This document shows positions 6,869-40,600 of a DNA stretch of 64,000 nt, one piece after another. A program made the translations under genes and the position numbers. Every line of letters begins with the position of its first letter. The first letter of the stretch is position 1. Below the pieces are notes generated by a model. It was not told the DNA's origin, did not search any database, and was given only the letters and a program-made list of their open reading frames with translations. Location: contig NW_027361841.1 of NCBI RefSeq assembly GCF_039654945.1, positions 8,804,001 to 8,868,000 on the forward strand, given 5' to 3'. Source of the stretch: Dendrobates tinctorius (Eukaryota).

Positions 6869-6934
6869 TTTTGGTAAAAATGTACACAAAATCCCACAAA
6901 CTATATAGTAAGGTAAAATAAGGTACAATGTGTA

Positions 6935-7764
6935 TATAGGACAGGGGAGATGTAGAATTTCTGAACACACTTGTGGACACTGTTGGATTGTGTGAGGCCC
7001 AGTGAATATCACACCGCTATGTCACAGGCTCAATGTCACAGGTGTGAAAAATGTCACTATAGGACAGGGGAGATGAAGAATTTCTGAACACACTTGTGGA
7101 CACTGTTGGATTGTGTGAGGCCCGGTGAATATCACACCGCTATGTCACAGGCTCAATGTCACAGGTGTGAAAAATGTCACTATAGGACAGGGGAGATGTA
7201 GAATTTCTGAACACATTTGTGGGCACTGTTGGATTGTGTGAGGCCCAGTTAATATCACACCGCTATGTCACAGTTTCAATGTCGCAGGTGTGAAAAATGT
7301 TACTATAGGACAGGGGAGATGTAGAATTTCTGAACACACTTGTGGACACTGTTGGATTGTGTGAGGCCCAGTGAATATCACACCGCTATGTCACAGGCTC
7401 AATGTCGCAGGTGTGAAAAATGTCACTATAGGACAGGGGAGATGTAGAATTTCTGAACACATTTGTGGGCACTGTTGGATTGTGTGAGGCCCAGTGAATA
7501 TCACACCGCTATGTCACAGTCTCAATGTCACAGGTGTGAAAAATGTCACTATAGGACAGGGGAGATGTAGAATTTCTGAACACACTTGTGGACACTGTTG
7601 GATTGTGTGAGGCCCAGTAAATATCACACCACTATGTCACAGGCTCAATGTCGCAGGTGTGAAAAATGTCACTATAGGACAGGAGAGATGTAGAATTTCT
7701 GAACACACTTGTGGACACTGTTGGATTGTGTGAGGCCCAGTGAATATCACACCGCTATGTCACA
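6935..7764. repeat. 123-bp tandem repeat, left portion (~6.7 units)
   Basis: AGGACAGGGGAGATG recurs at 6938, 7061, 7184... Confidence 0.97.
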
Positions 7765-14045: not shown

Positions 14046-14195
14046 AGTATACAGCGTGCACACGTAAAGGTAAGTGACTATCGATATGTATACCGTGGCA
14101 CAGCTGAAATGGTGCACAAAAAAGGTTCCCACACCAAAGAATATATAAAATAAATTTTTGGCACTCAACTTGAAATGATTGGTAGAATTTTATTC

Positions 14196-14249
14196 GCAGT
14201 CATAATAGACGTTTCGGTCAATTCATTCTGACCTTTCTCAATATACTGC
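14196..14249 (-). ncRNA. Minimal hammerhead ribozyme (PLE pLTR)
   Basis: Same motif as 7879-7932. Confidence 0.75.
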
Positions 14250-15960: not shown

Positions 15961-16870
15961 TCAAATAAAGGACAAAAGATCGTATTCCCTATTGAGACCC
16001 CTTGGAGATAGGGTCTCCAGCTCGTGTATCCAGTAAGCCTCTCTCTTTTTTAGAGTCTGGATCCGGTTGCCCCCTCGTCTTGGCAATGGGATCTGTTCAA
16101 TAACCTGGAATTTCAATTGGGGTATCGTATGTCCTGCACTAATGAAGTGATGGGGTAGGGGTAATAATGTGTTGCTGCATCTTATGGTGGACTTGTGTTT
16201 ACTTATGCGGTCTTTTATGGATTGTGTGGTTTCACCAATATAAAGGAGGCCACATGGGCACTTGATCAAATATACCACGTACGACGTTTCGCAGGTGGAA
16301 TAGTCCTTAATCTTATAGCGTTTACCTGAATGTGGATGATGGAAGTAATTCCCCTTGAGGACATTGCTGCATTGATTACAATGTAAACATGGGTAAGTAC
16401 CGGTTCTTGGTTGTGATAAGAACCTCTGTGTGGAGGGGCGTGGTCCAGATCCTATATCAGCTTTGATCAGAGTGTCACGTATGTTACGAGGACGTTTGTA
16501 ACACGGTAGGAAATCTTGTTGAAATTCTGGTATATCAGGATGTGCTTCCTTTAAGAGATTCCAATGTTTCCTAATCGTATGGTGGAGGATGTGAACATAG
16601 GGATGGAACGTGTGAACAAAGGGTATGCGCCCAGTAACGGGTTGTTTGAGTGATGGTGAGGGTTGTAAAGCTTGATGTAATACATTAGGGGGATAGCCTC
16701 TCTCCCTAAATTTCTGAAACATCTCCTCCCTTCTCACATCATTAGTAACTGGATCCGTGACAATGCGTTCTAATCTTTTGAATTAAGAACGTGGTATGGA
16801 TTTCTTTGTGGATGGTGGGTGAAGACTCTGGAAATGAAGTAGACTGTTACGGTCTGTAGGTTTTATATAT
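15961..16870 (-). pseudogene. 5'-truncated PLE ORF2 (RT thumb + GIY-YIG), left side of the palindrome centre
   Basis: 258-aa ORF essentially identical to the ORF2 C-terminus. Confidence 0.93.
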
Positions 16871-17765
16871 AGACCGTAACAGTCTACTTCATTTCCAGAG
16901 TCTTCACCCACCATCCACAAAGAAATCCATACCACGTTCTCAATTCAAAAGATTAGAACGCATTGTCACGGATCCAGTTACTAATGATGTGAGAAGGGAG
17001 GAGATGTTTCAGAAATTTAGGGAGAGAGGCTATCCCCCTAATGTATTACATCAAGCTTTACAACCCTCACCATCACTCAAACAACCCGTTACTGGGCGCA
17101 TACCCTTTGTTCACACGTTCCATCCCTATGTTCACATCCTCCACCATACGATTAGGAAACATTGGAATCTCTTAAAGGAAGCACATCCTGATATACCAGA
17201 ATCTCAACAAGATTTCCTACCGTGTTACAAACGTCCTCGTAACATACGTGACACTCTGATCAAAGCTGATATAGGATCTGGACCACGCCCCTCCACACAG
17301 AGGTTCTTATCACAACCAAGAACCGGTACTTACCCATGTTTACATTGTAATCAATGCAGCAATGTCCTCAAGGGGAATTACTTCCATCATCCACATTCAG
17401 GTAAACGCTATAAGATTAAGGACTATTCCACCTGCGAAACGTCGTATGTGGTATATTTGATCAAGTGCCCATGTGGCCTCCTTTATATTGGTGAAACCAC
17501 ACAATCCATAAAAGACCGCATAAGTAAACACAAGTCCACCATAAGATGCAGCAACACATTATTACCCCTACCCCATCACTTCATTAGTGCAGGACATACG
17601 ATACCCCAATTGAAATTCCAGGTTATTGAACAGATCCCATTGCCAAGACGAGGGGGCAACCGGATCCAGACTCTAAAAAAGAGAGAGGCTTACTGGATAC
17701 ACGAGCTGGAGACCCTATCTCCAAGGGGTCTCAATAGGGAATACGATCTTTTGTCCTTTATTTGA
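16871..17765 (+). pseudogene. 5'-truncated PLE ORF2 (RT thumb + GIY-YIG), right side of the palindrome centre
   Basis: Mirror image of 15961-16855 (x pairs with 33726-x). Confidence 0.93.
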
Positions 17766-19476
17766 ACTTATAACAATGGGGTATCTTCATTATTTGCAAA
17801 TCCCTAACGGACTTATTTCACCGATGTGAGGACGTTATAGATACTTAACTCATGGGTAATGCATAGTTTTGTGTTTTACCAGGTATATTCTGCAGCATAT
17901 ATATTATACATTGGAAACACTGATATACTACTACTATGTAGTCATTTATACATATCCTTTTTTTATATATGTTCATTGACATACAGTTTTGTCTTTTACA
18001 GAGCCGTCGCTATTGAATAGACAACATGCAATTTGTCACCTTCCGACCCTTCCTTCTGGATCCCTGACCTCTCCTCATCTCGTTTTCCTATTTCCCCTAT
18101 CTCCTTACCCGCTGCCTTATATATACATTATAGTTTGCTCTAAATATCGTATTCTTCCCATTAAACAACATTTCTCATACACTCCTATGTCTGTGTTTGT
18201 GCCATTGTGCCATGTACACTACTTATCATGAGGGATCTCATGTTTACATTCCCTTTCGAGTGTCATTTGACACTATCATATAGCGCGACGTCACTTCCGG
18301 TGACGTACTTCCGGTTTTACGGCCGGATTGTTAGTCCCGCCCCTAATGTTTAAAAATGAGCGCCTTCCACTGTCACCTTGCCCATGAACAAGCGGTGGAT
18401 GCCGAGTTACATTGTGGCAGGAGACACTACTATCTACTACTGGTAAGGGACCTCACTAGTTTACCTTTTCATATATTGTCATTCCTTCGGTAGGGACGCA
18501 TTTTGACCCACATTCTCTTATATAGACCGCATTGGTAATCAGAGTTTTGGACCCGGGCCTCATTACCAAGTTCATTGATGGTGGGTACACATTTTTCTTG
18601 GGACATGCTCTTTTACGCTGAATGTCAGATATTTATGACTTATTCTGGCTGAAAGCCAGACATCTAAGACGTATTTTTTGATCATGGTTTCAGATAGAAA
18701 AAGGAAATTACGGGGCAATACAGATTTGAATTGACAAGTACTTACAAGGATATCATGATCAGGGACATACAGACTTATCTCTAGTGTATTTATGGTCCGG
18801 GTCCCATCACCCTGCATATAGAGACATATATGGTACGCTTTTCATTATATATCCTCTGTATATATATTTTCTTCAACAATCAATGTATGATCTGGAGAGA
18901 TCTATTTATACCTTATTTATTGCCTAGGTACATTTATACCAGTGACCCATGTCGCAGGACATACAAAATTTTGTATGATATACCACAGGTTGGTCATTTT
19001 CCTCATACACAGATTGCTATATATATTTAAACCGATGCTCCTACCATAGTCAACATATAACAAGGCTTATTTTTTCATATCGACTTAGGCCTCATTCGGA
19101 CCGTAGGCAATTGATTCACGGACCCTTTTGCTCCCTGTTATACCTTTATGTAAGTGATCCCATATACTGAACATATTTACCTCACCCCGGTTTCTTGTTT
19201 TGACTGACATGAACATATATTTGAATCTAGATATCTGCCACACAATTTTTCTCTACATCTCAAGAGCAGTCGGGTATGTTTCATACTTTATTTCCCCCCC
19301 CCTCCTTTTTTTCGTTTTCTGTGACTTTTACCTCTTGTTCACATTTTATATCTAGGTCTTCCCACCACTCATGCACATGATTTTGATGTCTTTATTTCTT
19401 GATGTGATGATCATACATTATTGTTCATAGTTTTGATTTATTGTTATTATATATTCTTTTCAACTTCTGTACCGTT

Positions 19477-19530
19477 GCAGTATATTGAGAAAGGTCAGAA
19501 TGAATTGACCGAAACGTCTATTATGACTGC
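19477..19530 (+). ncRNA. Minimal hammerhead ribozyme (PLE pLTR)
   Basis: TTGAGAA core, GGTCA/TGACC stem II, GAAACGTC, GCAGT/ACTGC stem I; AATAAA follows. Confidence 0.75.
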
Positions 19531-19680
19531 GAATAAAATTCTACCAATCATTTCAAGTTGAGTGCCAAAAATTTATTTTATATATTCTCTGGTGTGGGAA
19601 CCTTTTTTGTGCACCATTTCAGCTGTGCCACGGTATACATATCGATAGTCACTTACCTTTACGTGTGCACGCTGTATACT

Positions 19681-20432
19681 ATGTCTTCATTGATTTTTTC
19701 CTACAATCAAGAAGAAACTAATGCAATTTTGTCTAAGACAAATTTTTCTAGTGATTTCCTCAAGGCTCCACCGAGAGAAACGAGAGGAAGAGATCTGGAG
19801 CGTGAGTCACGACATCTAATTAATCTCAACTACATTGTGCCACATTGACCGAATATCTTCGAGTCAATCGCATCCCAAGGGGTCTTAGAGTTCCATTACG
19901 ACCAACCCTCTTTAGTGATTCCTCTGTTTTCTGTCAGAAGTTTGAACAGATTTTGAACAAATGTTCATTTGATTTAATGACTTTGACTGTCGAACACCTG
20001 CAGGGTGCCATTACCTCTTCAAAAGATACGATACAGAACATTGAATCACAATTATCATCTTCCAGCACAGCAGATGAACTGAGCGCTTTAAAATCCAAAA
20101 TTAAGATTGTCACTGACCAACATAAGAGGGATACGGAAAACAGAAAAAGAATCAAGTTTCAAAGGGACCTTGAGGATTATGATAATAATAGAGTATATCA
20201 CTGGCGTGTTAACAATTTTCCCCGCTCTGACTCCTCTAGGTTTGAGTATCGCTCTTCTAATGAATCTTGCACCTCAGGCTCTGAGACTGAAAGGAGAGAC
20301 ACTCACCTAGGTCCACCTCATTTTTTGGACCAACGCAGACGACGTCCAAGAAGAAGAGGCCACGCCGTAGCCAACGAAGGAAGAGGTCCAGACTTCTACA
20401 GAGTGACACGGTCTCAGGTACAAGCTCGTTAG
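19681..20432 (+). pseudogene. PLE ORF1 with a 1-nt deletion at ~19827
   Basis: CTCAACTAC here versus CTCGAACTAC in the other copies; split ORFs 19558-19848 and 19845-20432. Confidence 0.88.
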
Positions 20433-23400
20433 TCATCAATATTTCTTCAAGGTCCCTTGGCATTGCAGAATACAACCTTTTACAGAAGGGTCTGTCTTTC
20501 TGCCCATCCTTTAAGCTAAGTACCTTTGATCTTGACATGGAATTACAGCGCTTCTTTCGTCGCATTAGACTACTTACACATTTTGCCATGAGTGTTCGGA
20601 GTGGTGACCCCACTCCCTCCGAGGGACAACCCCTGATTTCTATAAAAGATCTGGGCCTCCGGAATAAAAGCTCCTATAGACCGCCACAGAGCTCCCATGC
20701 TGTTGAATCCTTCATTGAATTTGTGGGGGGAAGGCATTCTCGAAAATCCGTCGAGATACTGATAATGGTTTACTACACTTCCCCTCCAATCTAACTAACT
20801 TAGACTTTCAGGCCCTACAGTCCCTACGTAGCGACAATAACATTATCATCAAACCTGCTGATAAAGGTGGGGCTATAGTTGTGATGGATAAGACTGATTA
20901 CATCAGGGAAGCCCTTCGCCAACTTGGCGACGAATCAGTCTATATCAAATTAGGACACGACCCAACAAGAGAGATTAGTGACAACATATCCAACATTCTC
21001 ACTACTTATCATGAAAAGGGAGTCATAGACTCCAAAACAAAAGAATACCTGATAAAAACACATCCTATTATACCGGTATTTTACATGCTTCCGAAGGTAC
21101 ACAAGAGTTTAGAATGCCCCCCGGGCCGACCCATTGTAGCGTCTTCTGAATCGATCTTATCTCCCATATCAATCTTCTTGGAGAAGATATTAACCCCATT
21201 GACACGGAAAGCACAATCCTTTCTACTTGATACGGGTGATTTTCTCGACACTATTAAGGACATTGGTACCATACCCAAAGAGTCCATTTTGGTCTCTTTT
21301 GACGTCAAAGATCTTTACACGTCCATACCCCATAACCAGGGAATTCAATGTGTAAGACAATTGCTGACACGGTCGGGTCTTCACCCTGATATGATCGATA
21401 TGTGCCTCGAATTACTCACAGTGGTTCTCACCAAAAACCACTTTCTTTTTGAGGAGACATTCTACCTACAGGCGAAAGGGACCGCAATGGGGTCTAACGT
21501 AACGCCCCCATATGCTAACATATACATGGCCACTTTCGAAGATGAGGTGGTGTATCCTGATCCCCGCTATATGACACATTACATTATCTGGAAACGATTC
21601 ATTGATGACGTGTTCTGTATTTGGACAGGTCCACCTGACACATTGGAAGATTTCTTTGCCACACTGAATCAAGCCTGGCCGGGCCTTAGATTCACTATTA
21701 CTATGGACTCATACAGAGTCAGTTTTCTTGATACCGTGATTATCAAGGATGGAGAGGGAGTACTCAGTACAGATCTATATATAAAACCTACAGACCGTAA
21801 CAGTCTACTTCATTTCCAGAGTCTTCACCCACCATCCACAAAGAAATCCATACCACGTTCTCAATTCAAAAGATTAGAACGCATTGTCACTAGAGTTGAG
21901 CGATACCATCCGATACTTCAAAGTATCGTATCGGATGGTATCGGCCGATCTTTAAAAAAAGTATCGGTATCGCCGATTCCGATACCGGAAGTCCCATTCA
22001 AGTCTATGGGACTTCCGGTATCGGAATAAGAAAAACCCTTTCCTGCCCTTGTACAGCCTCTCTGGGGTCTGTACGGGCCTTTCGGGGGGCTGTGCCGGCC
22101 TGCCAGGGGGTCTGTGCAGGCTCCGGTGGTCTGTGCCGGCCTGCCGGTGGTCTGTGCAGGCTCCGGGGGGCTGTGCCGGCCTGCCGGGGGGCTGTGCCGG
22201 CCTGCCGGGGGGCTGTGCCGGCCTGCCAGGGGGTCTGTGCAGGCTCCGGTGGTCTGTGCCGGCCTGCCGGTGGTCTGTGCAGGCTCCGGGGGGCTGTGCC
22301 GGCCTGCCGGGGGGCTGTGCCGGCCTGCCGGGGGGCTGTGCCGGCCTGCCGGGGGGCTGTGCCGGCCTGCCGGTGGTCTGTGCAGGCTCCGGGGGTCTGT
22401 GCAGGCATCGTCCGATGGGACTACAAGTCCCATCTGGCGATGCCTGCTACCATGACAGTGATTGACACATTAGCCAATGATGGGACAGTAGTAGTCCCAT
22501 CATCCGGCTAATGTGTTAAATGTAAAAAAAAAAAAAAAAAAAAAAAAATTACATGCTACATTCATACTACATACTACATACATGCTACATTCATACTACA
22601 TACTACATACATGCTACATTCATACTACATGCAACATACATACTACATATATACTACATGCATGCTACATATATACTACATGCATGCTACATACATACTA
22701 CATGATACATACTACATATATACTACATGCATGCTACATACATACTACATATATACTACATGCATGCTACATACATACTACATGCTACATGCATGCTACA
22801 TACATACTACATACATGCTACATATATACTACATACATACTACATATATACTACATGCATGCTACATATATACTACATGCATGCTACATACATACTACAT
22901 ATATACTACATGCATGCTACATACATACTACATGCTACATGCATGCTACATACATACTACATACATGCTACATATATACTACATACATACTACATATATA
23001 CTACATGCATGCTACATATATACTACATGCATGCTACATACATACTACATATATACTACATGCATGCTACATACATACTACATGCTACATGCATGCTACA
23101 TACATACTACATACATGCTACATATATACTACATACATACTACATATATACTACATACATACCACATACATACTACATGCATGCTACATATATACTACAT
23201 GCATGCTACATACATACTACATATATACTACATGCATGCTACATACATACTACATGCTACATGCATGCTACATACATACTACATGCTACATACATACCAC
23301 ATATATACTACATACATACAATACATTCATACAATACATACATAGACATACAGTACATATAACATAGAGTAACATACTTACCAATACTTGTCACATTGTT

Positions 23401-24751
23401 CCCCGAAGCCATTGTCGTCTACGGAATAAATATTAACATAACAAACCACAAAAATACTCACCCACGATCCGAAGCAGTCCACGAGTGTGTCCCACGACGA
23501 TCTTGGGTAGAGAACTGCAGCATCAGCTGATGCTGCCGTTCTCTACGGGCTGCAGGAATCCAATGACGGAAGGTAGGTATCCTTCCGCACTGTATTCCTC
23601 CGCCACTTAAAAAAAAAAAAAGTCCCTAGTCTCACTTTATGCCATTGCTGTGTGGGAATTTCCCACACAGCAATGGCATAAAGTGAGACTAGGGACTTTT
23701 TTTTTTTTAAGTGGCGGAGGAATACAGTGCGGAAGGATACCTACCTTCCGTCATTGGATTCCTGCAGCCCGTAGAGAACGGCAGCATCATCTGATGCTGC
23801 AGTTCTCTACCCAAGATCGTCGTGGGACACACTCGTGGACTGCTTCGGATCGTGGGTGAGTATTTTTGTGGTTTGTTATGTTAATATTTATTCCGGAAAG
23901 ACAATGGCTTCGGGGAACAATGTGACAAGTATTGGTAAGTATGTTACTCTATGTTATATGTACTGTATGTCTATGTATGTATTGTATGAATGTATTGTAT
24001 GTATGTAGTATATATGTGGTATGTATGTAGCATGTAGTATGTATGTAGTATGTATGTAGCATGCATGTAGCATGTAGTATGTATGTAGCATGCATGTAGT
24101 ATATATGTAGTATGTATGTAGCATGCATGTAGTATATATGTAGCATGTATGTAGTATGTATGTGGTATGTATGTAGCATGTAGTATATATGTAGCATGCA
24201 TGTAGTATATATGTAGTATGTATGTAGTATGTATGTAGCATGTATGTAGTATATATGTAGTATGTATGTAGTATATATGTAGCATGTATGTAGTATATAT
24301 GTAGTATGTATGTAGTATATATGTAGCATGCATGTAGTATATATGTAGTATGTATGTAGTATATATGTAGCAAGCATGTAGTATATATGTAGTATGTATG
24401 TAGTATATATGTAGCATGTATGTAGTATGTATGTAGCATGCATGTAGCATGTAGTATGTATGTAGCATGCATGTAGTATATATGTAGTATGTATGTAGCA
24501 TGCATGTAGTATATATGTAGCATGCATGTAGTATGTATGTGGTATGTATGTAGCATGTAGTATATATGTAGCATGCATGTAGTATGTATGTAGTATGTAT
24601 GTAGTATGTATGTAGCATGCAGTATGTATGTAGTATGTATGTAGTATATATGTAGTATGTATGTAGCATGCATGTAGTATGTATGTAGTATGTATGTAGT
24701 ATGTATGTAGTATATATGTAGTATGTATGTAGCATGTAGTATGTATGTAGT

Positions 24752-24786
<35 letters not shown>

Positions 24787-26099
24787 AACACATTAGCCGG
24801 ATGATGGGACTACTACTGTCCCATCATTGGCTAATGTGTCAATCACTGTCATGGTAGCAGGCATCGCCCGATGGGACTTGTAGTCCCATCGGACGATGCT
24901 TGCACAGACCCCCGGACATCAGCACAGCCCCCCGGCAGGCCGGCACAGCCCCCCGGCAGGCCGGTACAGACCCCCACAGGGTGCACAGCCCCCCGGCAGG
25001 CCGGCACAGCCCCCCGGCAGGCCGGCAGAGACCCCGGGCAGTCCACACAGCCCCCCGGCAGGCCGGCACAGCCCCCCGGCAGGCCGGCAGAGACCCCCGG
25101 AAGGCCCGAAATGACGGCGCATCATGATGCGCACACACCGCGCATCATGATGACGTCAGGCCGTCAATCAACTGAACTTCCGATTCCGATGCCGAATTCC
25201 GATATTGAAAAAATATCGGAAGTCGGTATCGGAATTCCGATACAGCAAGTATCGGCCGATACCCGATACTTGCGGTATCGGAATGCTCAACACTAATTGT
25301 CACGGATCCAGTTACTAATGATGTGAGAAGGGAGGAGATGTTTCAGAAATTTAGGGAGAGAGGCTATCCCCCTAATGTATTACATCAAGCTTTACAACCC
25401 TCACCATCACTCAAACAACCCGTTACTGGGCGCATACCCTTTGTTCACACGTTCCATCCCTATGTTCACATCCTCCACCATACGATTAGGAAACATTGGA
25501 ATCTCTTAAAGGAAGCACATCCTGATATACCAGAATTTCAACAAGATTTCCTACCGTGTTACAAACGTCCTCGTAACATACGTGACACTCTGATCAAAGC
25601 TGATATAGGATCTGGACCACGCCCCTCCACACAGAGGTTCTTATCACAACCAAGAACCGGTACTTACCCATGTTTACATTGTAATCAATGCAGCAATGTC
25701 CTCAAGGGGAATTACTTCCATCATCCACATTCAGGTAAACGCTATAAGATTAAGGACTATTCCACCTGCGAAACGTCGTACGTGGTATATTTGATCAAGT
25801 GCCCATGTGGCCTCCTTTATATTGGTGAAACCACACAATCCATAAAAGACCGCATAAGTAAACACAAGTCCACCATAAGATGCAGCAACACATTATTACC
25901 CCTACCCCATCACTTCATTAGTGCAGGACATACGATACCCCAATTGAAATTCCAGGTTATTGAACAGATCCCATTGCCAAGACGAGGGGGCAACCGGATC
26001 CAGACTCTAAAAAAGAGAGAGGCTTACTGGATACACGAGCTGGAGACCCTATCTCCAAGGGGTCTCAATAGGGAATACGATCTTTTGTCCTTTATTTGA
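20321..26099 (+). pseudogene. PLE ORF2 (RT-GIY-YIG) interrupted by a foldback hAT element
   Basis: ORF 20881-22029 diverges after RLERIVT at 21890 and resumes at 25304. Confidence 0.93.
21891..25295 (+). mobile_element. Non-autonomous foldback hAT element, copy 1
   Basis: Ends TAGAGTTGAGCG / TGCTCAACACTA; 8-bp TSD ATTGTCAC (21883-21890, 25296-25303); inverted arms of GC minisatellite, TACA-type microsatellite and unique core, centred on 23659. Confidence 0.95.
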
Positions 26100-26616
26100 A
26101 CTTATAACAATGGGGTATCTTCATTATTTGCAAATCCCTAATGGACTTATTTCACCGATGTGAGGACGTTATAGATACTTAACTCATGGGTAATGCATAG
26201 TTTTGTGTTTTACCAGGTATATTCTGCAGCATATATATTATACATTGGAAACACTGATATACTACTACTATGTAGTCATTTATACATATCCTTTTTTTAT
26301 ATATGTTCATTGACATACAGTTTTGTCTTTTACAGAGCCGTCGCTATTGAATAGACAACATGCAATTTGTCACCTTCCGACCCTTCCTTCTGGATCCCTG
26401 ACCTCTCCTCATCTCGTTTTCCTATTTCCCCTATCTCCTTACCCGCTGCCTTATATATACATTATAGTTTGCTCTAAATATCGTATTCTTCCCATTAAAC
26501 AACATTTCTCATACACTCCTATGTCTGTGTTTGTGCCATTGTGCCATGTACACTACTTATCATGAGGGATCTCATGTTTACATTCCCTTTCGAGTGTCAT
26601 TTGACACTATCATATA

Positions 26617-26690
26617 GCGCGACGTCACTTCCGGTGACGTACTTCCGGTTTTACGGCCGGATTGTTAGTCCCGCCCCTAATGTTTAAAAA
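26617..26690 (+). promoter_or_regulatory. Pol II promoter-like island in the PLE pLTR (also ~18283-18356 +, ~31538-31611 +, ~15370-15443 -, ~9053-9126 -)
   Basis: CpG-rich patch in AT-rich pLTR: GACGTCACTTCCGGTGACGTACTTCCGG (CRE-like and ETS sites), GC box CCGCCCC, TTTAAAA TATA-like box. Confidence 0.65.
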
Positions 26691-27736
26691 TGAGCGCCTT
26701 CCACTGTCACCTTGCCCATGAACAAGCGGTGGATGCCGAGTTACATTGTGGCAGGAGACACTACTATCTACTACTGGTAAGGGACCTCACTAGTTTACCT
26801 TTTCATATATTGTCATTCCTTCGGTAGGGACGCATTTTGACCCACATTCTCTTATATAGACCGCATTGGTAATCAGAGTTTTGGACCCGGGCCTCATTAC
26901 CAAGTTCATTGATGGTGGGTACACATTTTTCTTGGGACATGCTCTTTTACGCTGAATGTCAGATATTTATGACTTATTCTGGCTGAAAGCCAGACATCTA
27001 AGACGTATTTTTTGATCATGGTTTCAGATAGAAAAAGGAAATTACGGCGCAATACAGATTTGAATTGACAAGTACTTACAAGGATATCATGATCAGGGAC
27101 ATACAGACTTATCTCTAGTGTATTTATGGTCCGGGTCCCATCACCCTGCATATAGAGACATATATGGTACGCTTTTCATTATATATCCTCTGTATATATA
27201 TTTTCTTCAACAATCAATGTATGATCTGGAGAGATCTATTTACACCTTATTTATTGCCTAGGTACATTTATACCAGTGACCCATGTCGCAGGACATACGA
27301 AATTTTGTATGATATACCACAGGTTGGTCATTTTCCTCATACACAGATTGCTATATATATTTAAACCGATGCTCCTACCATAGTCAACATATAACAAGGC
27401 TTATTTTTTCATATCGACTTAGGCCTCATTCGGACCGTAGGCAATTGATTCACGGACCCTTTTGCTCCCTGTTATACCTTTATGTAAGTGATCCCATATA
27501 CTGAACATATTTACCTCACCCCGGTTTCTTGTTTTGACTGACATGAACATATATTTGAATCTAGATATCTGCCACACAATTTTTCTCTACATCTCAAGAG
27601 CAGTCGGGTATGTTTCATACTTTATTTTCCCCCCCCTCCTTTTTTTCGTTTTCTGTGACTTTTACCTCTTGTTCACATTTTATATCTAGGTCTTCCCACC
27701 ACTCATGCACATGATTTTGATGTCTTTATTTCTTGA
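26690..27736 (+). CDS. Predicted spliced accessory gene in the PLE pLTR (up to ~145 aa, unknown function); also 18356-19402 +, 31611-32658 +, 15370-14324 -, 9053-8007 -
   Basis: GT-AG introns of 81-100 nt separate exons ..27166, 27262-27322, 27423-27483, 27565-27607 and 27690-27736, which join in one open frame. The 5' exons (26690-26776, 26860-26914, acceptor at 27082 or 27106) are less certain. AATAAA at 27866. Confidence 0.45.
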
Positions 27737-27810
27737 TGTGATGATCATACATTATTGTTCATAGTTTTGATTTATTGTTATTATATATTCTTTTCAACTT
27801 CTGTACCGTT

Positions 27811-27864
27811 GCAGTATATTGAGAAAGGTCAGAATGAATTGACCGAAACGTCTATTATGACTGC
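27811..27864 (+). ncRNA. Minimal hammerhead ribozyme, predicted cleavage after GUC at 27852
   Basis: As above; U3-A8 covariant core; palindromic ACGT stem III typical of dimeric minimal PLE hammerheads. Confidence 0.75.
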
Positions 27865-28014
27865 GAATAAAATTCTACCAATCATTTCAAGTTGAGTGCC
27901 AAAAATTTATTTTATATATTCTCTGGTGTGGGAACCTTTTTTGTGCACCATTTCAGCTGTGCCACGGTATACATATCGATAGTCACTTACCTTTACGTGT
28001 GCACGCTGTATACT

Positions 28015-28767
28015 ATGTCTTCATTGATTTTTTCCTACAATCAAGAAGAAACTAATACAATTTTGTCTAAGACAAATTTTTCTAGTGATTTCCTCAAGGC
28101 TCCACCGAGAGAAACGAGAGGAAGAGATCTGGAGCGTGAGTCACGACATCTAATTAATCTCGAACTACATTGTGCCACATTGACCGAATATCTTCGAGTC
28201 AATCGCATCCCAAGGGGTCTTAGAGTTCCATTACGACCAACCCTCTTTAGTGATTCCTCTGTTTTCTGTCAGAAGTTTGAACAGATTTTGAACAAATGTT
28301 CATTTGATTTAATGACTTTGACTGTCGAACACCTGCAGGGTGCCATTACCTCTTCAAAAGATACGATACAGAACATTGAATCACAATTATCATCTTCCAG
28401 CACAGCAGATGAACTGAGCGCTTTAAAATCCAAAATTAAGATTGTCACTGACCAACATAAGAGGGATACGGAAAACAGAAAAAGAATCAAGTTTCAAAGG
28501 GACCTTGAGGATTATGATAATAATAGAGTATATCACTGGCGTGTTAACAATTTTCCCCGCTCTGACTCCTCTAGGTTTGAGTATCGCTCTTCTAATGAAT
28601 CTTGCACCTCAGGCTCTGAGACTGAAAGGAGAGACACTCACCTAGGTCCACCTCATTTTTTGGACCAACGCAGACGACGTCCAAGAAGAAGAGGCCACGC
28701 CGTAGCCAACGAAGGAAGAGGTCCAGACTTCTACAGAGTGACACGGTCTCAGGTACAAGCTCGTTAG
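28015..28767 (+). CDS. PLE ORF1, intact copy (250 aa from ATG 28015; predicted helical/coiled-coil region, basic C-terminus)
   Basis: Open frame with LTEYLRVNRIPRGLR (PLE N-terminal-type motif) and KRIKFQRDLEDY..VYHW; present in all three full units. Confidence 0.85.
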   Translation: MSSLIFSYNQEETNTILSKTNFSSDFLKAPPRETRGRDLERESRHLINLELHCATLTEYLRVNRIPRGLRVPLRPTLFSDSSVFCQKFEQILNKCSFDLMTLTVEHLQGAITSSKDTIQNIESQLSSSSTADELSALKSKIKIVTDQHKRDTENRKRIKFQRDLEDYDNNRVYHWRVNNFPRSDSSRFEYRSSNESCTSGSETERRDTHLGPPHFLDQRRRRPRRRGHAVANEGRGPDFYRVTRSQVQAR

Positions 28768-31020
28768 TTATCAATATTTCTTCAAGGTCCCTTGGCATTG
28801 CAGAATACAACCTTTTACAGAAGGGTCTGTCTTTCTGCCCATCCTTCAAGCTAAGTACCTTTGATCTTGACATGGAATTACAGCGCTTCTTTCGTCGCAT
28901 TAGACTACTTACACATTTTGCCATGAGTGTTCGGAGTGGTGACCCCACTCCCTCCGAGGGACAACCCCTGATTTCTATAAAAGATCTGGGCCTCCGGAAT
29001 AAAAGCTCCTATAGACCGCCACAGAGCTCCCATGCTGTTGAATCCTTCATTGAATTTGTGGGGGGAAGGCATTCTCGAAAATCCGTCGAGATACTGATAA
29101 TGGTTTACTACACTTCCCCTCCAATCTAACTAACTTAGACTTTCAGGCCCTACAGTCCCTACGTAGCGACAATAACATTATCATCAAACCTGCTGATAAA
29201 GGTGGGGCTATAGTTGTGATGGATAAGACTGATTACATCAGGGAAGCCCTTCGCCAACTTGGCGACGAATCAGTCTATATCAAATTAGGACACGACCCAA
29301 CAAGAGAGATTAGTGACATCATATCCAACATTCTCACTACTTATCATGAAAAGGGAGTCATAGACTCCAAAACAAAAGAATACCTGATAAAAACACATCC
29401 TATTATACCGGTATTTTACATGCTTCCGAAGGTACACAAGAGTTTAGAATGCCCCCCGGGCCGACCCATTGTAGCGTCTTCTGAATCGATCTTATCTCCC
29501 ATATCAATCTTCTTGGAGAAGATATTAACCCCATTGACACGGAAAGCACAATCCTTTCTACTTGATACGGGTGATTTTCTCGACACTATTAAGGACATTG
29601 GTACCATACCCAAAGAGTCCATTTTGGTCTCTTTTGATGTCAAAGATCTTTACACGTCCATACCCCATAACCAGGGAATTCAATGTGTAAGACAATTGCT
29701 GACACGGTCGGGTCTTCACCCTGATATGATCGATATGTGCCTCGAATTACTCACAGTGGTTCTCACCAAAAACCACTTTCTTTTTGAGGAGACATTCTAC
29801 CTACAGGCGAAAGGGACCGCAATGGGGTCTAACGTAGCGCCCCCATATGCTAACATATACATGGCCACCTTCGAAGATGAGGTGGTGTATCCTGATCCCC
29901 GCTATATGACACATTGCATTATGTGGAAACGATTCATTGATGACGTGTTCTGTATTTGGACAGGTCCACCTGACACATTGGAAGATTTCTTTGCCACACT
30001 GAATCAAGCCTGGCCGGGCCTTAGATTCACTATTACTATGGACTCATACAGAGTCAGTTTTCTTGATACCATGATTATCAAGGATGGAGAGGGGGTACTC
30101 AGTACAGATCTATATATAAAACCTACAGACCGTAACAGTCTACTTCATTTCCAGAGTCTTCACCCACCATCCACAAAGAAATCCATACCACGTTCTCAAT
30201 TCAAAAGATTAGAACGCATTGTCACGGATCCAGTTACTAATGATGTGAGAAGGGAGGAGATGTTTCAGAAATTTAGGGAGAGAGGCTATCCCCCTAATGT
30301 ATTACATCAAGCTTTACAACCCTCACCATCACTCAAACAACCTGTTACTGGGCGCATACCCTTTGTTCACACGTTCCATCCCTATGTTCACATCCTCCAC
30401 CATACGATTAGGAAACATTGGAATCTCTTAAAGGAAGCACATCCTGATATACCAGAATTTCAACAAGATTTCCTACCGTGTTACAAACGTCCTCGTAACA
30501 TACGTGACACTCTGATCAAAGCTGATATAGGATCTGGACCACGCCCCTCCACACAGAGGTTCTTATCACAACCAAGAACCGGTACTTACCCATGTTTACA
30601 TTGTAATCAATGCAGCAATGTCCTCAAGGGGAATTACTTCCATCATCCACATTCAGGTAAACGCTATAAGATTAAGGACTATTCCACCTGCGAAACGTCG
30701 TACGTGGTATATTTGATCAAGTGCCCATGTGGCCTCCTTTATATTGGTGAAACCACACAATCCATAAAAGACCGCATAAGTAAACACAAGTCCACCATAA
30801 GATGCAGCAACACATTATTACCCCTACCCCATCACTTCATTAGTGCAGGACATACGATACCCCAATTGAAATTCCAGGTTATTGAACAGATCCCATTGCC
30901 AAGACGAGGGGCAACCGGATCCAGACTCTAAAAAAGAGAGAGGCTTACTGGATACATGAGCTGGAGACCCTATCTCCAAGGGGTCTCAATAGGGAATACG
31001 ATCTTTTGTCCTTTATTTGA
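28656..31020 (+). CDS. PLE ORF2 RT + GIY-YIG, entered in the -1 frame from ORF1; frame breaks at G6 29060-29065 and G4 30907-30910
   Basis: The -1 frame reads FFGPTQTTSKKKRPRR..VINISS..KGLSFCP..; then the 571-aa ORF 29216-30931 with RT and GIY-YIG motifs. Confidence 0.92.
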
Positions 31021-32732
31021 ACTTATAACAATGGGGTATCTTCATTATTTGCAAATCCCTAACGGACTTATTTCACCGATGTGAGGACGTTATAGATACT
31101 TAACTCATGGGTAATGCATAGTTTTGTGTTTTACCAGGTATATTCTGCAGCATATATATTATACATTGGAAACACTGATATACTACTACTATGTAGTCAT
31201 TTATACATATCCTTTTTTTATATATGTTCATTGACATACAGTTTTGTCTTTTACAGAGCCGTCGCTATTGAATAGACAACATGCAATTTGTCACCTTCCG
31301 ACCCTTCCTTCTGGATCCCTGACCTCTCCTCATCTCGTTTTCCTATTTCCCCTATCTCCTTACCCGCTGCCTTATATATACATTATAGTTTGCTCTAAAT
31401 ATCGTATTCTTCCCATTAAACAACATTTCTCATACACTCCTATGTCTGTGTTTGTGCCATTGTGCCATGTACACTACTTATCATGAGGGATCTCATGTTT
31501 ACATTCCCTTTCGAGTGTCATTTGACACTATCATATAGCGCGACGTCACTTCCGGTGACGTACTTCCGGTTTTACGGCCGGATTGTTAGTCCCGCCCCTA
31601 ATGTTTAAAAATGAGCGCCTTCCACTGTCACCTTGCCCATGAACAAGCGGTGGATGCCGAGTTACATTGTGGCAGGAGACACTACTATCTACTACTGGTA
31701 AGGGACCTCACTAGTTTACCTTTTCATATATTGTCATTCCTTCGGTAGGGACGCATTTTGACCCACATTCTCTTATATAGACCGCATTGGTAATCAGAGT
31801 TTTGGACCCGGGCCTCATTACCAAGTTCATTGATGGTGGGTACACATTTTTCTTGGGACATGCTCTTTTACGCTGAATGTCAGATATTTATGACTTATTC
31901 TGGCTGAAAGCCAGACATCTAAGACGTATTTTTTGATCATGGTTTCAGATAGAAAAAGGAAATTACGGCGCAATACAGATTTGAATTGACAAGTACTTAC
32001 AAGGATATCATGATCAGGGACATACAGACTTATCTCTAGTGTATTTATGGTCCGGGTCCCATCACCCTGCATATAGAGACATATATGGTACGCTTTTCAT
32101 TATATATCCTCTGTATATATATTTTCTTCAACAATCAATGTATGATCTGGAGAGATCTATTTACACCTTATTTATTGCCTAGGTACATTTATACCAGTGA
32201 CCCATGTCGCAGGACATACGAAATTTTGTATGATATACCACAGGTTGGTCATTTTCCTCATACACAGATTGCTATATATATTTAAACCGATGCTCCTACC
32301 ATAGTCAACATATAACAAGGCTTATTTTTTCATATCGACTTAGGCCTCATTCGGACCGTAGGCAATTGATTCACGGACCCTTTTGCTCCCTGTTATACCT
32401 TTATGTAAGTGATCCCATATACTGAACATATTTACCTCACCCCGGTTTCTTGTTTTGACTGACATGAACATATATTTGAATCTAGATATCTGCCACACAA
32501 TTTTTCTCTACATCTCAAGAGCAGTCGGGTATGTTTCATACTTTATTTCCCCCCCCCTCCTTTTTTTTCGTTTTCTGTGACTTTTACCTCTTGTTCACAT
32601 TTTATATCTAGGTCTTCCCACCACTCATGCACATGATTTTGATGTCTTTATTTCTTGATGTGATGATCATACATTATTGTTCATAGTTTTGATTTATTGT
32701 TATTATATATTCTTTTCAACTTCTGTACCGTT

Positions 32733-32786
32733 GCAGTATATTGAGAAAGGTCAGAATGAATTGACCGAAACGTCTATTATGACTGC
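32733..32786 (+). ncRNA. Minimal hammerhead ribozyme (terminal pLTR)
   Basis: Same motif as 27811-27864. Confidence 0.75.
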
Positions 32787-32839
32787 GAATAAAATTCTAC
32801 CAATCATTTCAAGTTGAGTGCCAAAAATTTATTTTATAT

Positions 32840-33961
32840 ACCGCTATGTCACAGGCTCAATGTCGCAGGTGTGAAAAATGTCACTATAGGAAAGGAGAGA
32901 TGTAGAATTTCTGAAGACACTTGTGGACACTGTTGGATTGTGTGAGGCCCAGTGAATATCACACTGCTATGTCACCGGCTCAATGTCGCAGGTGTGAAAA
33001 ATGTAATTATAGGACAGGGGAGATGTAGAATTTCTGAACACACTTGTGAACACTGTTGGATTGCGTGAGGCCCAGTGAATATCACACCGCTATGTCACAG
33101 GCTCAATGTCATAGGTGTGAACAATGTCACTATAGGAGAGGGGAGATGTAGAATTTCTAAACACACTTGTGGAGACTGTTGGATTGTGTGAGGCCCAGTG
33201 AATATCACACCACTATGTCACAGGCTCAATGTCGCAGGTGTGAAAAATGTCACTATAGGACAGGGGAGATGTAGAATTTCTGAACACACTTGTGGACACT
33301 GTTGGATTGTGTGAGGCCGAGTGATTATCACACCGCTATGTCACAGTCTCAATGTCGCAGGTGTGCAAAATGTCACTATAGGACAGGGGAGATGTAGAAT
33401 TTCTGAACCCACTTGTGGACACTGTTGGATTGTGTGAGGCCCAGTGAATATCACACCGCTATGTCAGAGGCTCAAAGTCGCAGGTGTGAAAAATGTCACT
33501 ATAAGACAGGGGAGATGTAGAATTTCAGACCACACTTGTGGACACTGTTGGATTGTGTGAGGCCCAGTGAATATCACACTGCTATGTCACAGGCTCAATG
33601 TTGCAGGTGTGAAAAATGTCACTATAGGACAGGGGAGATGTAGAATTTCTGAACACACTTGTGGAAACTGTTGGATTGTGTGAGGCCTAGTGAATATCAC
33701 ACCGCTATGTCACAGTCTCAATGTCGCAGATGTGAAAAATGTCACTATAGGACAGGGGAGATGTAAAATTTCTGAACACACTTGTGGAAACTGTTGGATT
33801 GTGTGAGGCCCAGTGAATATCACACCGCTATGTCACAGTCTCAATGTTGCAGGTGTGAAAAATGTCACTATAGGACAGGGGAGATGTAGAATTTCTGAAC
33901 ACACTTGTGGACACTGTTGGATTGTGTGAGGCCCAGTGAATATCACACCGCTATATCACAG
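32840..33961. repeat. 123-bp tandem repeat, right portion (~9 units), same array as 6935-7764
   Basis: Same unit and orientation, resuming immediately after the PLE end. Confidence 0.97.
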
Positions 33962-37683: not shown

Positions 37684-40600
37684 TTAGGATTATTTTGTCT
37701 ATAAAAAAGACGACTGTGGGGCAATCTAATAACCATGTATAAGTATATAAGGGGACAATACAAATATCTTTCCGAGGATCTGTTTATACCAAAGAAGGTG
37801 ACAGTCACAGAGAATGCCCCCTATTCTCTGCACCTGGAGGAGAGAAGGTTTTTCCACCAACATAGAAAAGGATTCTTTACTGTTAGGGGATTGAGAACCT
37901 GGAATTCCCTGCCTGAGGAGGTGCTGATGGTGAACTCAGTTGAGGGGTTCAAGAGAGGCCTGTATTTCTTCCTGGAGAATAGCAAATATTGTATGTTACA
38001 GTGATGAGGTTCTTTAGAAGGACATAGATCTGGGGATTTATTCTGACGGAATGTAGGATAAACTGGATGGACAAATGTCTTTTTTGGGCCTTGCTAATAG
38101 AGTTGAGCGATACCGTCCGATACTTCAAAGTATCAGATCGGAATGGATCGGCCGATCTTAAAAAAAAGTATCGGTATCGCCGATTCCGATACCGGAAGTC
38201 CCATTCAAGTCTATGGGACTTCCGGTATCGGAATAAGAAAAATCCTGTTTTTCCCTTGTACAGCCTCTCTGGGGTCTGTACGGGCCTTTCGGGGGGCTGT
38301 GCCGGCCTGCCAGGGGGTCTGTGCAGGCTCCGGTGGTCTGTGCCGGCCTGCCGGGGGGCTGTGCAGGCTCCAGTGGGCTGTGCCGGCCTGCCGGGGGGCT
38401 GTGCCGGCCTGCCGGGGGGCTGTGCAGGCTCCGGGGGGCTGTGCCGGCCTGCCGGGGGGCTGTGCCGGCCTGCCGGGGGGCTGTGCAGGCTTCGGGGGTC
38501 TGTGCAGGCATCGTCCGATGGGACTACAAGTCCCATCGGGCGATGCCTGCTACCATGACAGTGATTGACACATTAGCCAATGATGGGACAGTAGTAGTCC
38601 CATCATCCGGCTAATGTGTTGAATGTAAAAAAAAAAAAAAAATTACATGCTACATACATGCTACATACATACAACATGCATACTACATACATGCTACATT
38701 CATACTACATACTACATACATGCTACATTCATACTACATATATACTACATGCAACATACATACTACATATATACTACATGCATGCAACATGCATACTACA
38801 TATATACTACATGCAACATACATACTACATATATACTACATGCAACATACATACTACATATATACTACATGCATGCAACATGCATACTACATATATACTA
38901 CATGCTACATACATACTACATATATACTACATACATACTGCATGCTACATACATACTACATGCTACATACATACCACATACATACTACATACATACTACA
39001 TGCTACATATATACTACATATATACTACATGCTACATACATACTACATATATGCTACATACATACTACATACATACTACATGCTACATACATACTACATA
39101 TATACTACATACATACTACATACATGCTACATACATACTACATGCTACATACATACCACATACATACTACATACATACTACATGCTACATATGTACTACA
39201 TATATACTACATGCATGCTACATACATACTGCATGCTACATGCATGCTACATACATACTACATACATACTACATGCTACATACATACCACATATATACTA
39301 CATACATACTACATACAATACATTCATACAATACATACATAGACATACAGTACATATAACATAGAGTAACATACTTACCAATACTTGTCACATTGTTCCC
39401 CGAAGCCATTGTCTTTTACGGAATAAATATTAACATAACAAACCACAAAAATACTCACCCACGATCCGAAGCAGTCCACGAGTGTGTCCCACGACGATCT
39501 TGGGTAGAGAACTGCAGCATCAGCTGTTGCTGCCGTTCTCTACGGGCTGCAGGAATCCAATGACGGAAGGTAGGTATCCTTCCGCACTGTATTCCTCCGC
39601 CTCTTAAAAAAAAAAAGTCCCTAGTCTCACTTTATGCCATTGCTGCGTGGGAATTTCCCACACAGCAATGGCATAAAGTGAGACTAGGGACTTTTTTTTT
39701 TTAAGTGGCGGAGGAATACAGTGCGGAAGGATACCTACCTTCCGTCATTGGATTCCTGCAGCCCGTAGAGAACGGCAGCAACAGCTGATGCTGCAGTTCT
39801 CTACCCAAGATCGTCGTGGGACACACTCGTGGACTGCTTCGGATCGTGGGTGAGTATTTTTGTGGTTTGTTATGTTAATATTTATTCCGTAAAAGACAAT
39901 GGCTTCGGGGAACAATGTGACAAGTATTGGTAAGTATGTTACTCTATGTTATATGTACTGTATGTCTATGTATGTATTGTATGAATGTATTGTATGTAGT
40001 ATGTATGTAGTATATATGTGGTATGTATGTAGCATGTAGTATGTATGTAGTATATATGTAGTATGTATGTAGCATGCATGTAGTATATATGTAGTATGTA
40101 TGTAGCACGTAGTATGTATGTAGCATGCATGTAGTATGTATGTAGTATGTATGTAGTATGTATGTGGTATGTATGTAGCATGTAGTATGTATGTAGCATG
40201 TAGTATGTATGTAGTATGTATGTAGTATATATGTAGTATGTATGTAGCATGTAGTATGTATGTAGCATGCATGTAGTATATATGTAGTATGTATGTATGT
40301 AGTATGTATGTAGTATATATGTAGCATGTAGTATGTATGTAGCATGCATGTAGTATATATGTGTTATGTATGTAGTATGTATGTAGTATGTATGTAGTAT
40401 GTATGTGGTATATATGTGGTATGTATGTGGTATGTATGTAGTATGTATGTAGTATGTATGTAGTATGTATGTGGTATGTATGTAGTATGTATGTAGCATG
40501 TAGTATGTATGTAGCATGCATGTAGTATGTATGTAGTATTTTTTTTTTTTATTTTTTTTTTTTAACATTTAACACATTAGCCGGATGATGGGACTACTAC

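What the first reader, a model, noticed from the sequence alone, without database searches (positions are those of the whole stretch)
26617..27871. Candidate intron-rich accessory gene hidden in the PLE pseudo-LTR
Seen: behind a CRE/ETS/GC-box/TATA-like promoter lies a regular series of GT-AG introns (26777-26859, 83 nt; 27167-27261, 95; 27323-27422, 100; 27484-27564, 81; 27608-27689, 82). The last five exons join across phases 1, 2, 0, 1 into one stop-free frame: ..LSLVYLWSGSHHPAYRDIY-GTFIPVTHVAGHTKFCMIYHR-PHSDRRQLIHGPFCSLLYLY-ISATQFFSTSQEQS-GLPTTHAHDFDVFIS*. It is followed by the hammerhead and AATAAA (27866). A compatible 5' end is MSAFHCH..YYLLL-TALVIRVLDPGLITKFID, but that ATG abuts the TATA-like box and intron 2 is ambiguous. 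The frame is invisible to an unspliced ORF track and is repeated in all five pLTRs. Established: PLEs retain introns when they retrotranspose. Inference: a third, spliced, His-rich gene (or spliced leader/lncRNA) is expressed from the same promoter that yields the unspliced genomic RNA, giving a virus-like three-product retroelement.
Basis: partly seen in the sequence, partly recalled or inferred. Interest (0 to 1): 0.88.

Follow-up and report, generated by a model that had tools for sequence, protein, structure and literature searches.

The report
Spliced leader of a Penelope retrotransposon
The repeat arm of a young frog-type Penelope-like retrotransposon really does carry a string of short spliceosomal introns, four of them backed by intron-less molecules in public sequencing runs, but the exons look like a fast-evolving untranslated leader and not a hidden third gene.

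Summary
The sequence facts hold. All five GT-AG intervals, the stop-free joined frame, AATAAA and five >99.5% identical copies are there.

The gene reading is not supported:
- With the observed splicing, the frame has an in-frame stop at its 5' side. Its first ATG gives 74 codons, after at least 14 upstream ATGs.
- The best ORF over 80 isoform combinations is 137 codons, which is not beyond chance (P about 0.07).
- The proposed start ATG is absent from all relatives.
- Relatives with 78% identical ORF1 show no similarity to the peptide.
- Copies differ by 1-nt indels inside the frame.

Best reading: a multi-intron, partly spliced, non-coding leader/3'UTR. It extends the known Penelope 5'UTR intron.

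Caveat: the library type of the runs is unknown, so the joints could be RNA or intron-less DNA retrocopies. Either implies splicing.

The parts
26617..26690 (+). Promoter-like block: tandem GACGTCACTTCCGGT (CRE-like plus ETS-like), GC box and a TATA-like TTTAAAAA
   Evidence: Read directly. TRF finds 2 copies of 14-15 nt. 82-94% identical in L001, L003, L004 and L005 while the flanks are unalignable. The transcription start was not measured.
26712..26776 (+). Putative first exon. The start is inferred from the TATA position. It contains a conserved block (GAACAAGCGGTGGA...) and ends at a conserved donor.
   Evidence: Alignment A1. The start coordinate is an inference.
26777..26859 (+). The donor GGTAAG and the acceptor align with strong sites in all four relatives. 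It was not seen removed in any run.
   Evidence: Contigs 26333-26914 (X2) and 26718-26916 (X4) run through it.
26915..27027 (+).
   Evidence: GT..AG joint in X2 and X5.
27028..27166 (+). Exon b (139 nt).
   Evidence: X4 joins 26914 to 27262.
27167..27261 (+).
   Evidence: GT..AG joint in X2, X4 and X5. The X5 contig has 136 nt on the shorter side of the joint.
27323..27422 (+).
   Evidence: GT..AG joint in X2.
27484..27564 (+).
   Evidence: GT..AG joint in X2.
27608..27689 (+). The donor GGTATG aligns in all relatives. It was not seen removed, and it holds 1-nt length differences between copies.
   Evidence: Contigs 27565-28749 (X2) and 27261-27702 (X4) run through it. Indels at 27624, 27629 and 27639.
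27810..27865 (+). Minimal hammerhead homologue with T/A at core positions 3 and 8. The GTC cleavage triplet is at 27850-27852.
   Evidence: Alignment A2 to relatives with canonical CTGAnGA cores, and helix II covaries in L002. No Rfam hit.
27866..27871 (+). AATAAA, conserved in five of the six aligned sequences (ATTAAA in L003)
27890..27978 (+). Conserved non-coding block (invariant AAGTTGAGTGCCAAA). Two copies of the element end here, at the equivalents of 27919 and 27978.
   Evidence: By analogy with PMC11167929, this is likely the region where reverse transcription starts (inference).
28015..28767 (+). ORF1 (250 aa from the first ATG), downstream of the leader
   Evidence: 78% identical to the L001 counterpart. 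No Pfam hit.
29216..30931 (+). ORF2: reverse transcriptase plus GIY-YIG endonuclease. In this copy the frame closes early, near 30907.
   Evidence: Pfam RVT_1 and GIY-YIG. Contigs carry one extra G after 30907.

Best explanation
The stretch is the roughly 1.1-kb untranslated leader of a young two-ORF Penelope-like retrotransposon of a frog. Because the units lie in partial tandem, the same stretch is also the 3' UTR of the unit upstream.

It sits between two conserved blocks. Upstream is a promoter-like block. Downstream is a block holding the hammerhead, the poly(A) signal and the 3' end of the element.

The leader carries at least four genuine spliceosomal introns of 81-113 nt, and probably six. 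They are removed only in part, so intron-containing and intron-less forms coexist, and one exon can be skipped.

The exons are not translated into a conserved product. What is kept across related families is the promoter, the first exon with its intron boundaries, some later splice sites and the overall length, not the exon sequence.

Inferred, not shown:
- Transcription starts about 25-30 nt after the TATA-like box.
- Splicing helps export or translation of the ORF1/ORF2 messenger, as shown for the single Penelope intron in Drosophila virilis.
- Unspliced RNA is the template that is copied back into DNA, which is why every copy keeps its introns.
For: The element is a Penelope-like element:
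- RVT_1 plus GIY-YIG.
- Partial tandem and inverted copies with a period of 4921 nt.
- Relatives are frog PLEs.

The introns are real:
- Contigs of three runs from two studies lack exactly four GT..AG intervals.
- One contig has the 95-nt intron removed but the 100-nt intron retained.
- One run shows exon skipping, and unspliced contigs coexist with spliced ones.

The exons are non-coding:
- In the observed-splice form the best ATG-ORF is 74 codons, after at least 14 upstream ATGs.
- Open-frame lengths lie within shuffles, P=0.13 and P=0.07.
- tblastn of the joined peptides against five related loci finds nothing, while ORF1 scores 78% identity at E about 1e-121.
- The leader is unalignable to relatives apart from the two conserved blocks.
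- ATG 26690 is absent from the relatives.
- Between two Ranitomeya subfamilies ORF2 is 89% identical, but the leader is 63-83% identical with many indels, and predicted exons fare no better than introns.
- Copies differ by 1-nt indels and by 4 non-synonymous to 1 synonymous changes in the proposed frame.

The architecture is conserved:
- Leader length is 955-1103 nt in relatives against 1133 nt here.
- Strong donor sites number 4-8 per sense-strand leader against about 1-2 in shuffles.
- The donor and acceptor of intron 1 and the donor of intron 5 align in all five sequences.

Precedent: Penelope has a 75-bp intron 46 bp after its transcription start. Its splice sites are conserved at 67% identity, both RNA forms exist, and deleting it abolishes reporter expression (PMC2377424). 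PMC8557442 suggests other PLEs may hold introns upstream of the ORF.
Against: - The library type of the runs is not on record. The joints could come from intron-less DNA retrocopies and not from RNA. Present-day transcription and splicing are therefore not strictly shown.
- Contigs cannot show the strand, starts, ends or which junctions share one molecule. No contig physically links a spliced junction to ORF1.
- The two introns with the best conserved sites (26777-26859 and 27608-27689) were never seen removed.
- Contigs also cover the 350 nt upstream of the proposed promoter. One run joins foreign sequence to an AG acceptor at 26335/26336, so some of these molecules start elsewhere.
- The 137-codon ORF of one isoform is at the edge of chance (P=0.07), and histidine is 2.7 times its expectation from base composition.
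- The joined peptide could not be sent to the large protein databases because it has no reference.
Confidence: 0.75

Rival explanations
1. A third, spliced accessory gene. An isoform that removes intron 1, skips exon b and removes the 100- and 81-nt introns (with or without intron 5) would encode a 117-137 aa His-rich protein starting at ATG 26690.
For: - Such an ORF exists in that isoform.
- Its exon skip is seen once, in X4 at depth 2.
- The intron 1 splice sites are conserved.
- Histidine is 10.5% against 3.9% expected.
Against: - Intron 1 removal was never seen.
- ATG 26690 lies 3 nt after the TATA-like box and is absent from all relatives.
- P=0.07 over the isoform set.
- No similarity in related leaders.
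- Indels and mostly non-synonymous differences between copies.
- Exon lengths at the aligned last exon differ (43, 87 and 64 nt) and are not congruent modulo 3.
Confidence: 0.05
2. The joints are DNA, not RNA. The runs are low-coverage genomic libraries, and the intron-less forms are retrocopies made from spliced or partly spliced RNA. Nothing is then shown about present expression.
For: - The kind of every holding run is unknown.
- Contigs are very short on average (45-114 nt).
- In X5 the depth runs leader > ORF2 > ORF1, as 5'-truncated DNA copies would give.
Against: - In X2, ORF1 (depth 20) is deeper than ORF2 (1-9), the opposite of a 5'-truncation gradient.
- X4 covers almost only 26336-27702.
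- Spliced forms reach a third to more than half of local depth, yet all five copies in the window keep every intron.
- Even if this rival is true, precise GT..AG loss still implies that these are spliced introns.
Confidence: 0.2
3. The leader is a fragment of an intron-containing host gene that the element picked up, or these copies are exonised by host transcripts. On this reading the open frame is a decayed remnant of host coding sequence.
For: - PLEs can mobilise intron-containing host genes (PMC3846280).
- One run joins 89 nt absent from the window to an AG acceptor at 26335/26336 and covers only the leader, at about 2% divergence.
Against: - Related families keep a leader of the same length in the same place, with aligned first-intron boundaries and a last donor. 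The leader is therefore ancestral to the clade, not a recent capture.
- No internal repeats or modular duplication.
- No protein similarity could be tested remotely.
Confidence: 0.08

Closest known systems
5'UTR intron in the pLTR of Penelope (Drosophila virilis), from Arkhipova et al. 2003 as cited in PMC8557442 and from PMC2377424
   Same: - A short spliceosomal intron a few tens of nt after a start site inside the repeat arm.
- Splice sites conserved between families of about 67-71% identity.
- Spliced and unspliced forms coexist.
- Introns are kept in genomic copies.
- A hammerhead lies in the same repeat arm (PMC4209133).
   Different: - Here there are at least four, probably six, introns spread over 1.1 kb, with exon skipping.
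- The host is a vertebrate and the element has two ORFs.
- The promoter is TATA/CRE/ETS-like, not a TATA-less LINE-like one.
- The hammerhead lies about 120 nt after the last candidate intron and does not abut an intron end.
Chlamys-3_cRei, a PLE of Chlamydomonas (PMC8557442)
   Same: The start site is in the pLTR, there is a 5'UTR intron, and an alternative splice isoform is supported by long reads.
   Different: [quoted passage not shown] Its alternative isoform changes the start codon of the main ORF. Here the introns lie wholly in the leader.
Penelope-mediated copies of intron-containing host genes in Adineta vaga (PMC3846280)
   Same: Multi-intron sequence carried between pLTRs and retained after retrotransposition.
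   Different: Those are recognisable host genes (NRPS, LRR) with conserved coding sequence. Here no coding signal or host relative was found, and the segment is an ancestral part of the element.
Spliced subgenomic messengers for accessory genes of complex retroviruses
   Same: One promoter would yield both unspliced genomic RNA and spliced RNA.
   Different: No conserved accessory ORF. The introns are removed upstream of the main ORFs, not across them.

Membership tests
Penelope-like element (EN+) | Reverse transcriptase fused to a C-terminal GIY-YIG endonuclease | tested here: met
   Pfam RVT_1 and GIY-YIG on 29216-30931, and GIY-YIG on 25323-26099. Homologues are frog PLE proteins carrying PF00078, PF01541 and PF26215.
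Penelope-like element (EN+) | Partial tandem and inverted copies that create pseudo-LTRs | tested here: met
   Period of 4921 nt, 1.5-unit copies, and head-to-head inverted copies 13650-20075.
Penelope-like element (EN+) | Hammerhead ribozyme motif in the pLTR | tested here: inconclusive
   No Rfam match at E<=1. The site does align base for base with canonical CTGAnGA...GAAAC motifs of five related loci, with T/A at core positions 3 and 8. That covariant is reported for Cercyon PLEs (PMC4209133). Cleavage was not tested.
Penelope-like element (EN+) | Spliceosomal introns retained in genomic copies | tested here: met
   All five copies keep all the intervals, while molecules lacking four of them exist in public runs.
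   In the observed-splice form a stop lies just before 27064, the first in-frame ATG is 27309 (74 codons), and at least 14 ATGs lie upstream. The 117-137 codon ORF needs an unobserved splice.
   P=0.13. P=0.07 over 80 isoforms.
   tblastn E>=0.07 with no hit inside a leader, while ORF1 is 78% identical. ATG 26690 is absent from relatives. Indels occur in the predicted exons of relatives.
Spliced 5' leader of a PLE (Penelope type) | Intron shortly downstream of a start site inside the pLTR, with conserved splice sites | tested here: inconclusive
   The donor at 26777 and the acceptor at 26859 align with strong sites in four relatives, about 60 nt after the inferred start. This intron was not seen removed, and the start site was not measured.
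Spliced 5' leader of a PLE (Penelope type) | Both spliced and unspliced forms present | tested here: met
   Joint contigs and through-reading contigs occur in the same runs for four introns. Whether the runs are RNA or DNA is not on record.

The most novel reading that the evidence does not exclude
A whole clade of frog Penelope-like elements keeps a multi-intron leader whose exon sequence drifts freely, while its splice sites, length and flanking promoter and ribozyme blocks are held. On this reading it is the act of splicing, not any product, that is selected. Splicing would license export or translation of the ORF1/ORF2 messenger. Intron-retaining RNA would be reserved as the template for reverse transcription. 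This would be a splice-based division of labour in a retroelement that is not a retrovirus. A less likely version is that the exon-skipped isoform does encode the 117-137 aa His-rich peptide in this one family.
Probability: 0.25. Interest if true: 0.6.

Novelty: new variant of a known kind. Interest (0 to 1): 0.4.

Why it matters
How Penelope-like elements keep spliceosomal introns while copying themselves through RNA is an old open question, studied so far mainly with the single 75-bp intron of the Drosophila element.

This family is young (copies >99.5% identical). It has four to six short introns in one leader, and intron-less and intron-containing molecules occur side by side in public data. 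That gives many junctions to follow at once.

With long-read cDNA and genomic data from this frog, two things could be measured directly:
- which splice forms reach the cytoplasm or ribosomes;
- which forms are copied back into DNA.

The result also removes a tempting false lead. There is no evidence for a third gene, so these elements should not be annotated as three-product, virus-like units.

Tried and rejected
- **Rfam on 25000-33000 at E<=1:** no family at all. The hammerhead call therefore rests on homology only, and no snoRNA or miRNA explains the introns.
- **Phage collection search:** irrelevant and empty.
- **Codon-usage likelihood with the element's own ORFs as the model:** uninformative. 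The positive control, ORF1, scored as weakly as the leader frame.
- **Simple donor and acceptor weight matrices, with frequencies from my own memory:** they recover three of the four observed introns among 19 candidate pairs and miss the weak acceptor at 27564. I used them only to count strong donors and to mark aligned sites. The antisense counts are biased by the background I chose.
- **Tandem and dispersed repeat search in 26100-28100:** the regular spacing of exons and introns is not a decayed tandem duplication.
- **Search for the 30 letters that X4 joins to 26336:** absent from the window, so that upstream piece stays unidentified.
- **Corrected misreading:** I first read it as one contig linking the 27483|27565 junction to ORF1. 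The contig 27565-28749 lies on the minus strand and ends exactly at 27565, which is a branch point. No such physical link is shown.
- **Remote homology, family, atlas and structure searches of the joined peptide:** not done, because the peptide has no reference and I did not type it.
- **Earlier notes of this scan:** they held only first-reader notes on hammerheads and pLTRs, with no tests.

Full report
**What is in the sequence**

- The window is eukaryotic and has no N.
- The stretch 26300-28200 occurs five times at 99.6-99.9% identity. Three copies are on the + strand and two on the - strand, and all five include 26617-27871.
- The copies belong to one repeat unit of 4921 nt, arranged as partial tandems and head-to-head inversions.
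- The whole 25-kb cluster (7765-32840) sits inside a 123-nt satellite array.
- The unit's long ORF carries RVT_1 and GIY-YIG domains.
- Its nearest proteins are Penelope-like element (PLE) proteins of frogs: Ranitomeya, Dendrobates, Hyla and Xenopus. The best is 73% identical.
- The pseudo-LTR setting is therefore correct.

**Are the introns real?**

I had one search for sequencing runs and one read-laying run.

- Seven runs of one organism, from three studies, hold the stretch or part of it. Their library type is not on record.
- I laid four of them on one unit, 26150-31050. Three (X2, X4, X5, from two studies) carry joints; the fourth (X1) gave a single unspliced contig. The joints skip GT..AG intervals precisely.

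| Interval | Length | Runs | Status |
|---|---|---|---|

- One run joins 26914 to 27262, which skips exon 27028-27166.
- One contig has the 95-nt interval removed but the 100-nt interval retained.
- Contigs that read through the introns occur in the same runs.
- Three blind predictions hit to the base, so this cannot be chance.
- No contig lacks 26777-26859 or 27608-27689. Contigs 26333-26914 and 27565-28749 read straight through them. Contigs drop rare forms, so this is absence of evidence only.

**Caveat on what the joints are**

- Because the run type is unknown, the intron-less forms could be RNA or DNA retrocopies of spliced RNA.
- X2 looks RNA-like. ORF1 has depth 20 against 1-9 for ORF2, the opposite of a 5'-truncation gradient.
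- X4 also looks RNA-like, since it covers almost only 26336-27702.
- X5 has a DNA-like gradient.
- Either way, precise GT..AG loss means these are spliceosomal introns. What stays unshown is present-day expression, the strand, the ends and which junctions share a molecule.
- I first read as linking a junction to ORF1 in one contig. That was wrong. The contig ends exactly at 27565, which is a branch point.

**Is there a gene?**

With the four observed introns removed:

- It is closed by a stop just upstream.
- Its first ATG is at 27309, giving 74 codons.
- At least 14 ATGs lie before that one.

Only one combination gives a continuous ORF of 117-137 codons. It needs intron 1 removed (never seen), exon b skipped (seen once at depth 2), and the 100- and 81-nt introns removed.

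Dinucleotide shuffles give comparable lengths:

- P=0.13 for the longest open stretch.
- P=0.07 for the best ATG-ORF over the same 80 isoform combinations.

Other points against coding:

- ATG 26690 lies 3 nt after the TATA-like box, and all four relatives lack it.
- Differences between copies and run variants in the frame are four non-synonymous to one synonymous.
- 1-nt indels occur at 27624, 27629 and 27639.
- Histidine is 2.7 times its compositional expectation. That is weak once all residues and frames are considered.

**Related elements**

I fetched five loci from three dendrobatid genomes. Against the window's unit they align in only three places:

- The ORFs, at about 70% nucleotide identity.
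- The promoter-like block 26622-26677, at 82-94%.
- The block from the hammerhead to just before ORF1, 27810-27970, at 74-79%.

The 1.1 kb between the last two is unalignable, at about 48% in a forced global alignment. Its length is nevertheless kept: 955-1103 nt against 1133 nt.

- The joined peptides find nothing in those loci, while ORF1 is 78% identical.
- Between two Ranitomeya subfamilies ORF2 is 89% identical. Their leader is only 63-83% identical with many indels, predicted exons are no better kept than introns, and the hammerhead is 98% identical. That is how non-coding sequence behaves.

**What is conserved in the leader**

- Each related leader carries 4-8 strong donor-like sites on the sense strand, against about one or two in shuffles.
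- The first-exon block, the donor at 26777, the acceptor at 26859 and the donor at 27608 align with strong sites in all relatives.
- The aligned last exon is 43, 87 or 64 nt long in different families, so its length modulo 3 is not kept.
- The intron-rich architecture therefore looks ancestral to this clade, while the exon sequence is free to change.

**How it most likely works**

- The conserved CRE/ETS/GC/TATA-like block probably starts transcription near 26712-26720 (inferred).
- The transcript runs through a leader with four to six short introns, a variant hammerhead and AATAAA, and on into ORF1 and ORF2.
- Splicing is partial (shown, given the caveat above).
- In Drosophila virilis Penelope, one 75-bp intron lies 46 bp after the start site. 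Its splice sites are conserved at 67% identity, both RNA forms exist, and removing the intron abolishes reporter expression without lowering RNA (PMC2377424).
- By analogy, the frog introns probably aid export or translation, while intron-retaining RNA is copied into DNA. That would explain why every copy keeps them.
- The same stretch lies downstream of the ORF2 stop of the preceding unit. Splicing there would mark that RNA for nonsense-mediated decay (inference).

**Comparison with what is known, and novelty**

- Introns in PLE leaders and their retention are established (PMC8557442, PMC4209133, PMC3846280).
- PMC8557442 already suggested that other PLEs may hold introns upstream of the ORF.
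- What differs here:
  - the number of introns (at least four);
  - exon skipping;
  - the vertebrate host;
  - a two-ORF element;
  - conservation of the architecture without conservation of the sequence.
- I rate it a new variant of a known kind. It is of moderate interest as a test bed for the intron-retention question.
- The three-gene, virus-like reading should be dropped unless translation is shown.

**Limits**

- The joined peptide could not be sent to remote homology or structure tools, because it has no reference.
- There are no raw reads, so no starts, ends, strand or junction phasing.
- No relatives closer than about 71% nucleotide identity were available.

Noticed in passing
window 27810-27865: The hammerhead of this family reads TTGAGAA where five related loci read CTGAGGA, CTGAAGA or CTGATGA. 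This is a paired change at core positions 3 and 8, and helix II covaries in L002. Rfam finds nothing here even at E<=1.
   Followed up: partly
window 27890-27978: This non-coding block before ORF1 is strongly conserved, with AAGTTGAGTGCCAAA invariant in six sequences. Two copies of the element end inside it, at the equivalents of 27919 and 27978. It may be the site where the reverse transcriptase binds and starts, by analogy with the Anolis element (PMC11167929).
   Followed up: partly
window 26335/26336: A strong acceptor-like site (a pyrimidine run followed by CAG) lies here. One run joins 89 letters that are absent from the window to it, and another run's contig breaks there with a threefold rise in depth. 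This could be a host exon spliced into a diverged copy, or the boundary of a leader-only derivative.
   Followed up: partly
window 30907 (ORF2 of the copy 25296-32840): Contigs of two runs carry one extra G after 30907. In this copy the ORF2 frame closes at 30931, whereas the partial copy at 25323-26099 reads on to the equivalent of 31020. This copy therefore has a frameshift in its endonuclease part.
   Followed up: no
window 28774-29265: The gap between ORF1 and ORF2 has very low depth in run X2 (1.4-3.4, against 20 over ORF1). One run shows a 2-nt deletion at 29060.
   Followed up: no
window 6925-7764 and 32840-33960: The whole 25-kb cluster of Penelope copies is bracketed by the same 123-nt satellite (about 95% identical). 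The 3' ends of the two outer, mutually inverted copies face outward.
   Followed up: no
window 22000-25100, 38600-40600, 53900-57000: Large arrays of a degenerate tandem repeat (80-90% identical), partly in inverted orientation. They produce long spurious ORFs of 200-390 codons on both strands.
   Followed up: no
window 5144-7012 (-), 12276-13562 (+), 50421-51767 (-): Other mobile-element ORFs. One is a zf-BED protein. Two are reverse transcriptases that were not among the matches to the Penelope unit.
   Followed up: no
window 26719-26741; L001, L003, L004, L005 (alignment A1): A block at the very start of the inferred transcript (GAACAAGCGGTGGA..CCG.GTT) is nearly invariant across families whose leaders are otherwise unalignable. 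Its function is unknown.
   Followed up: no
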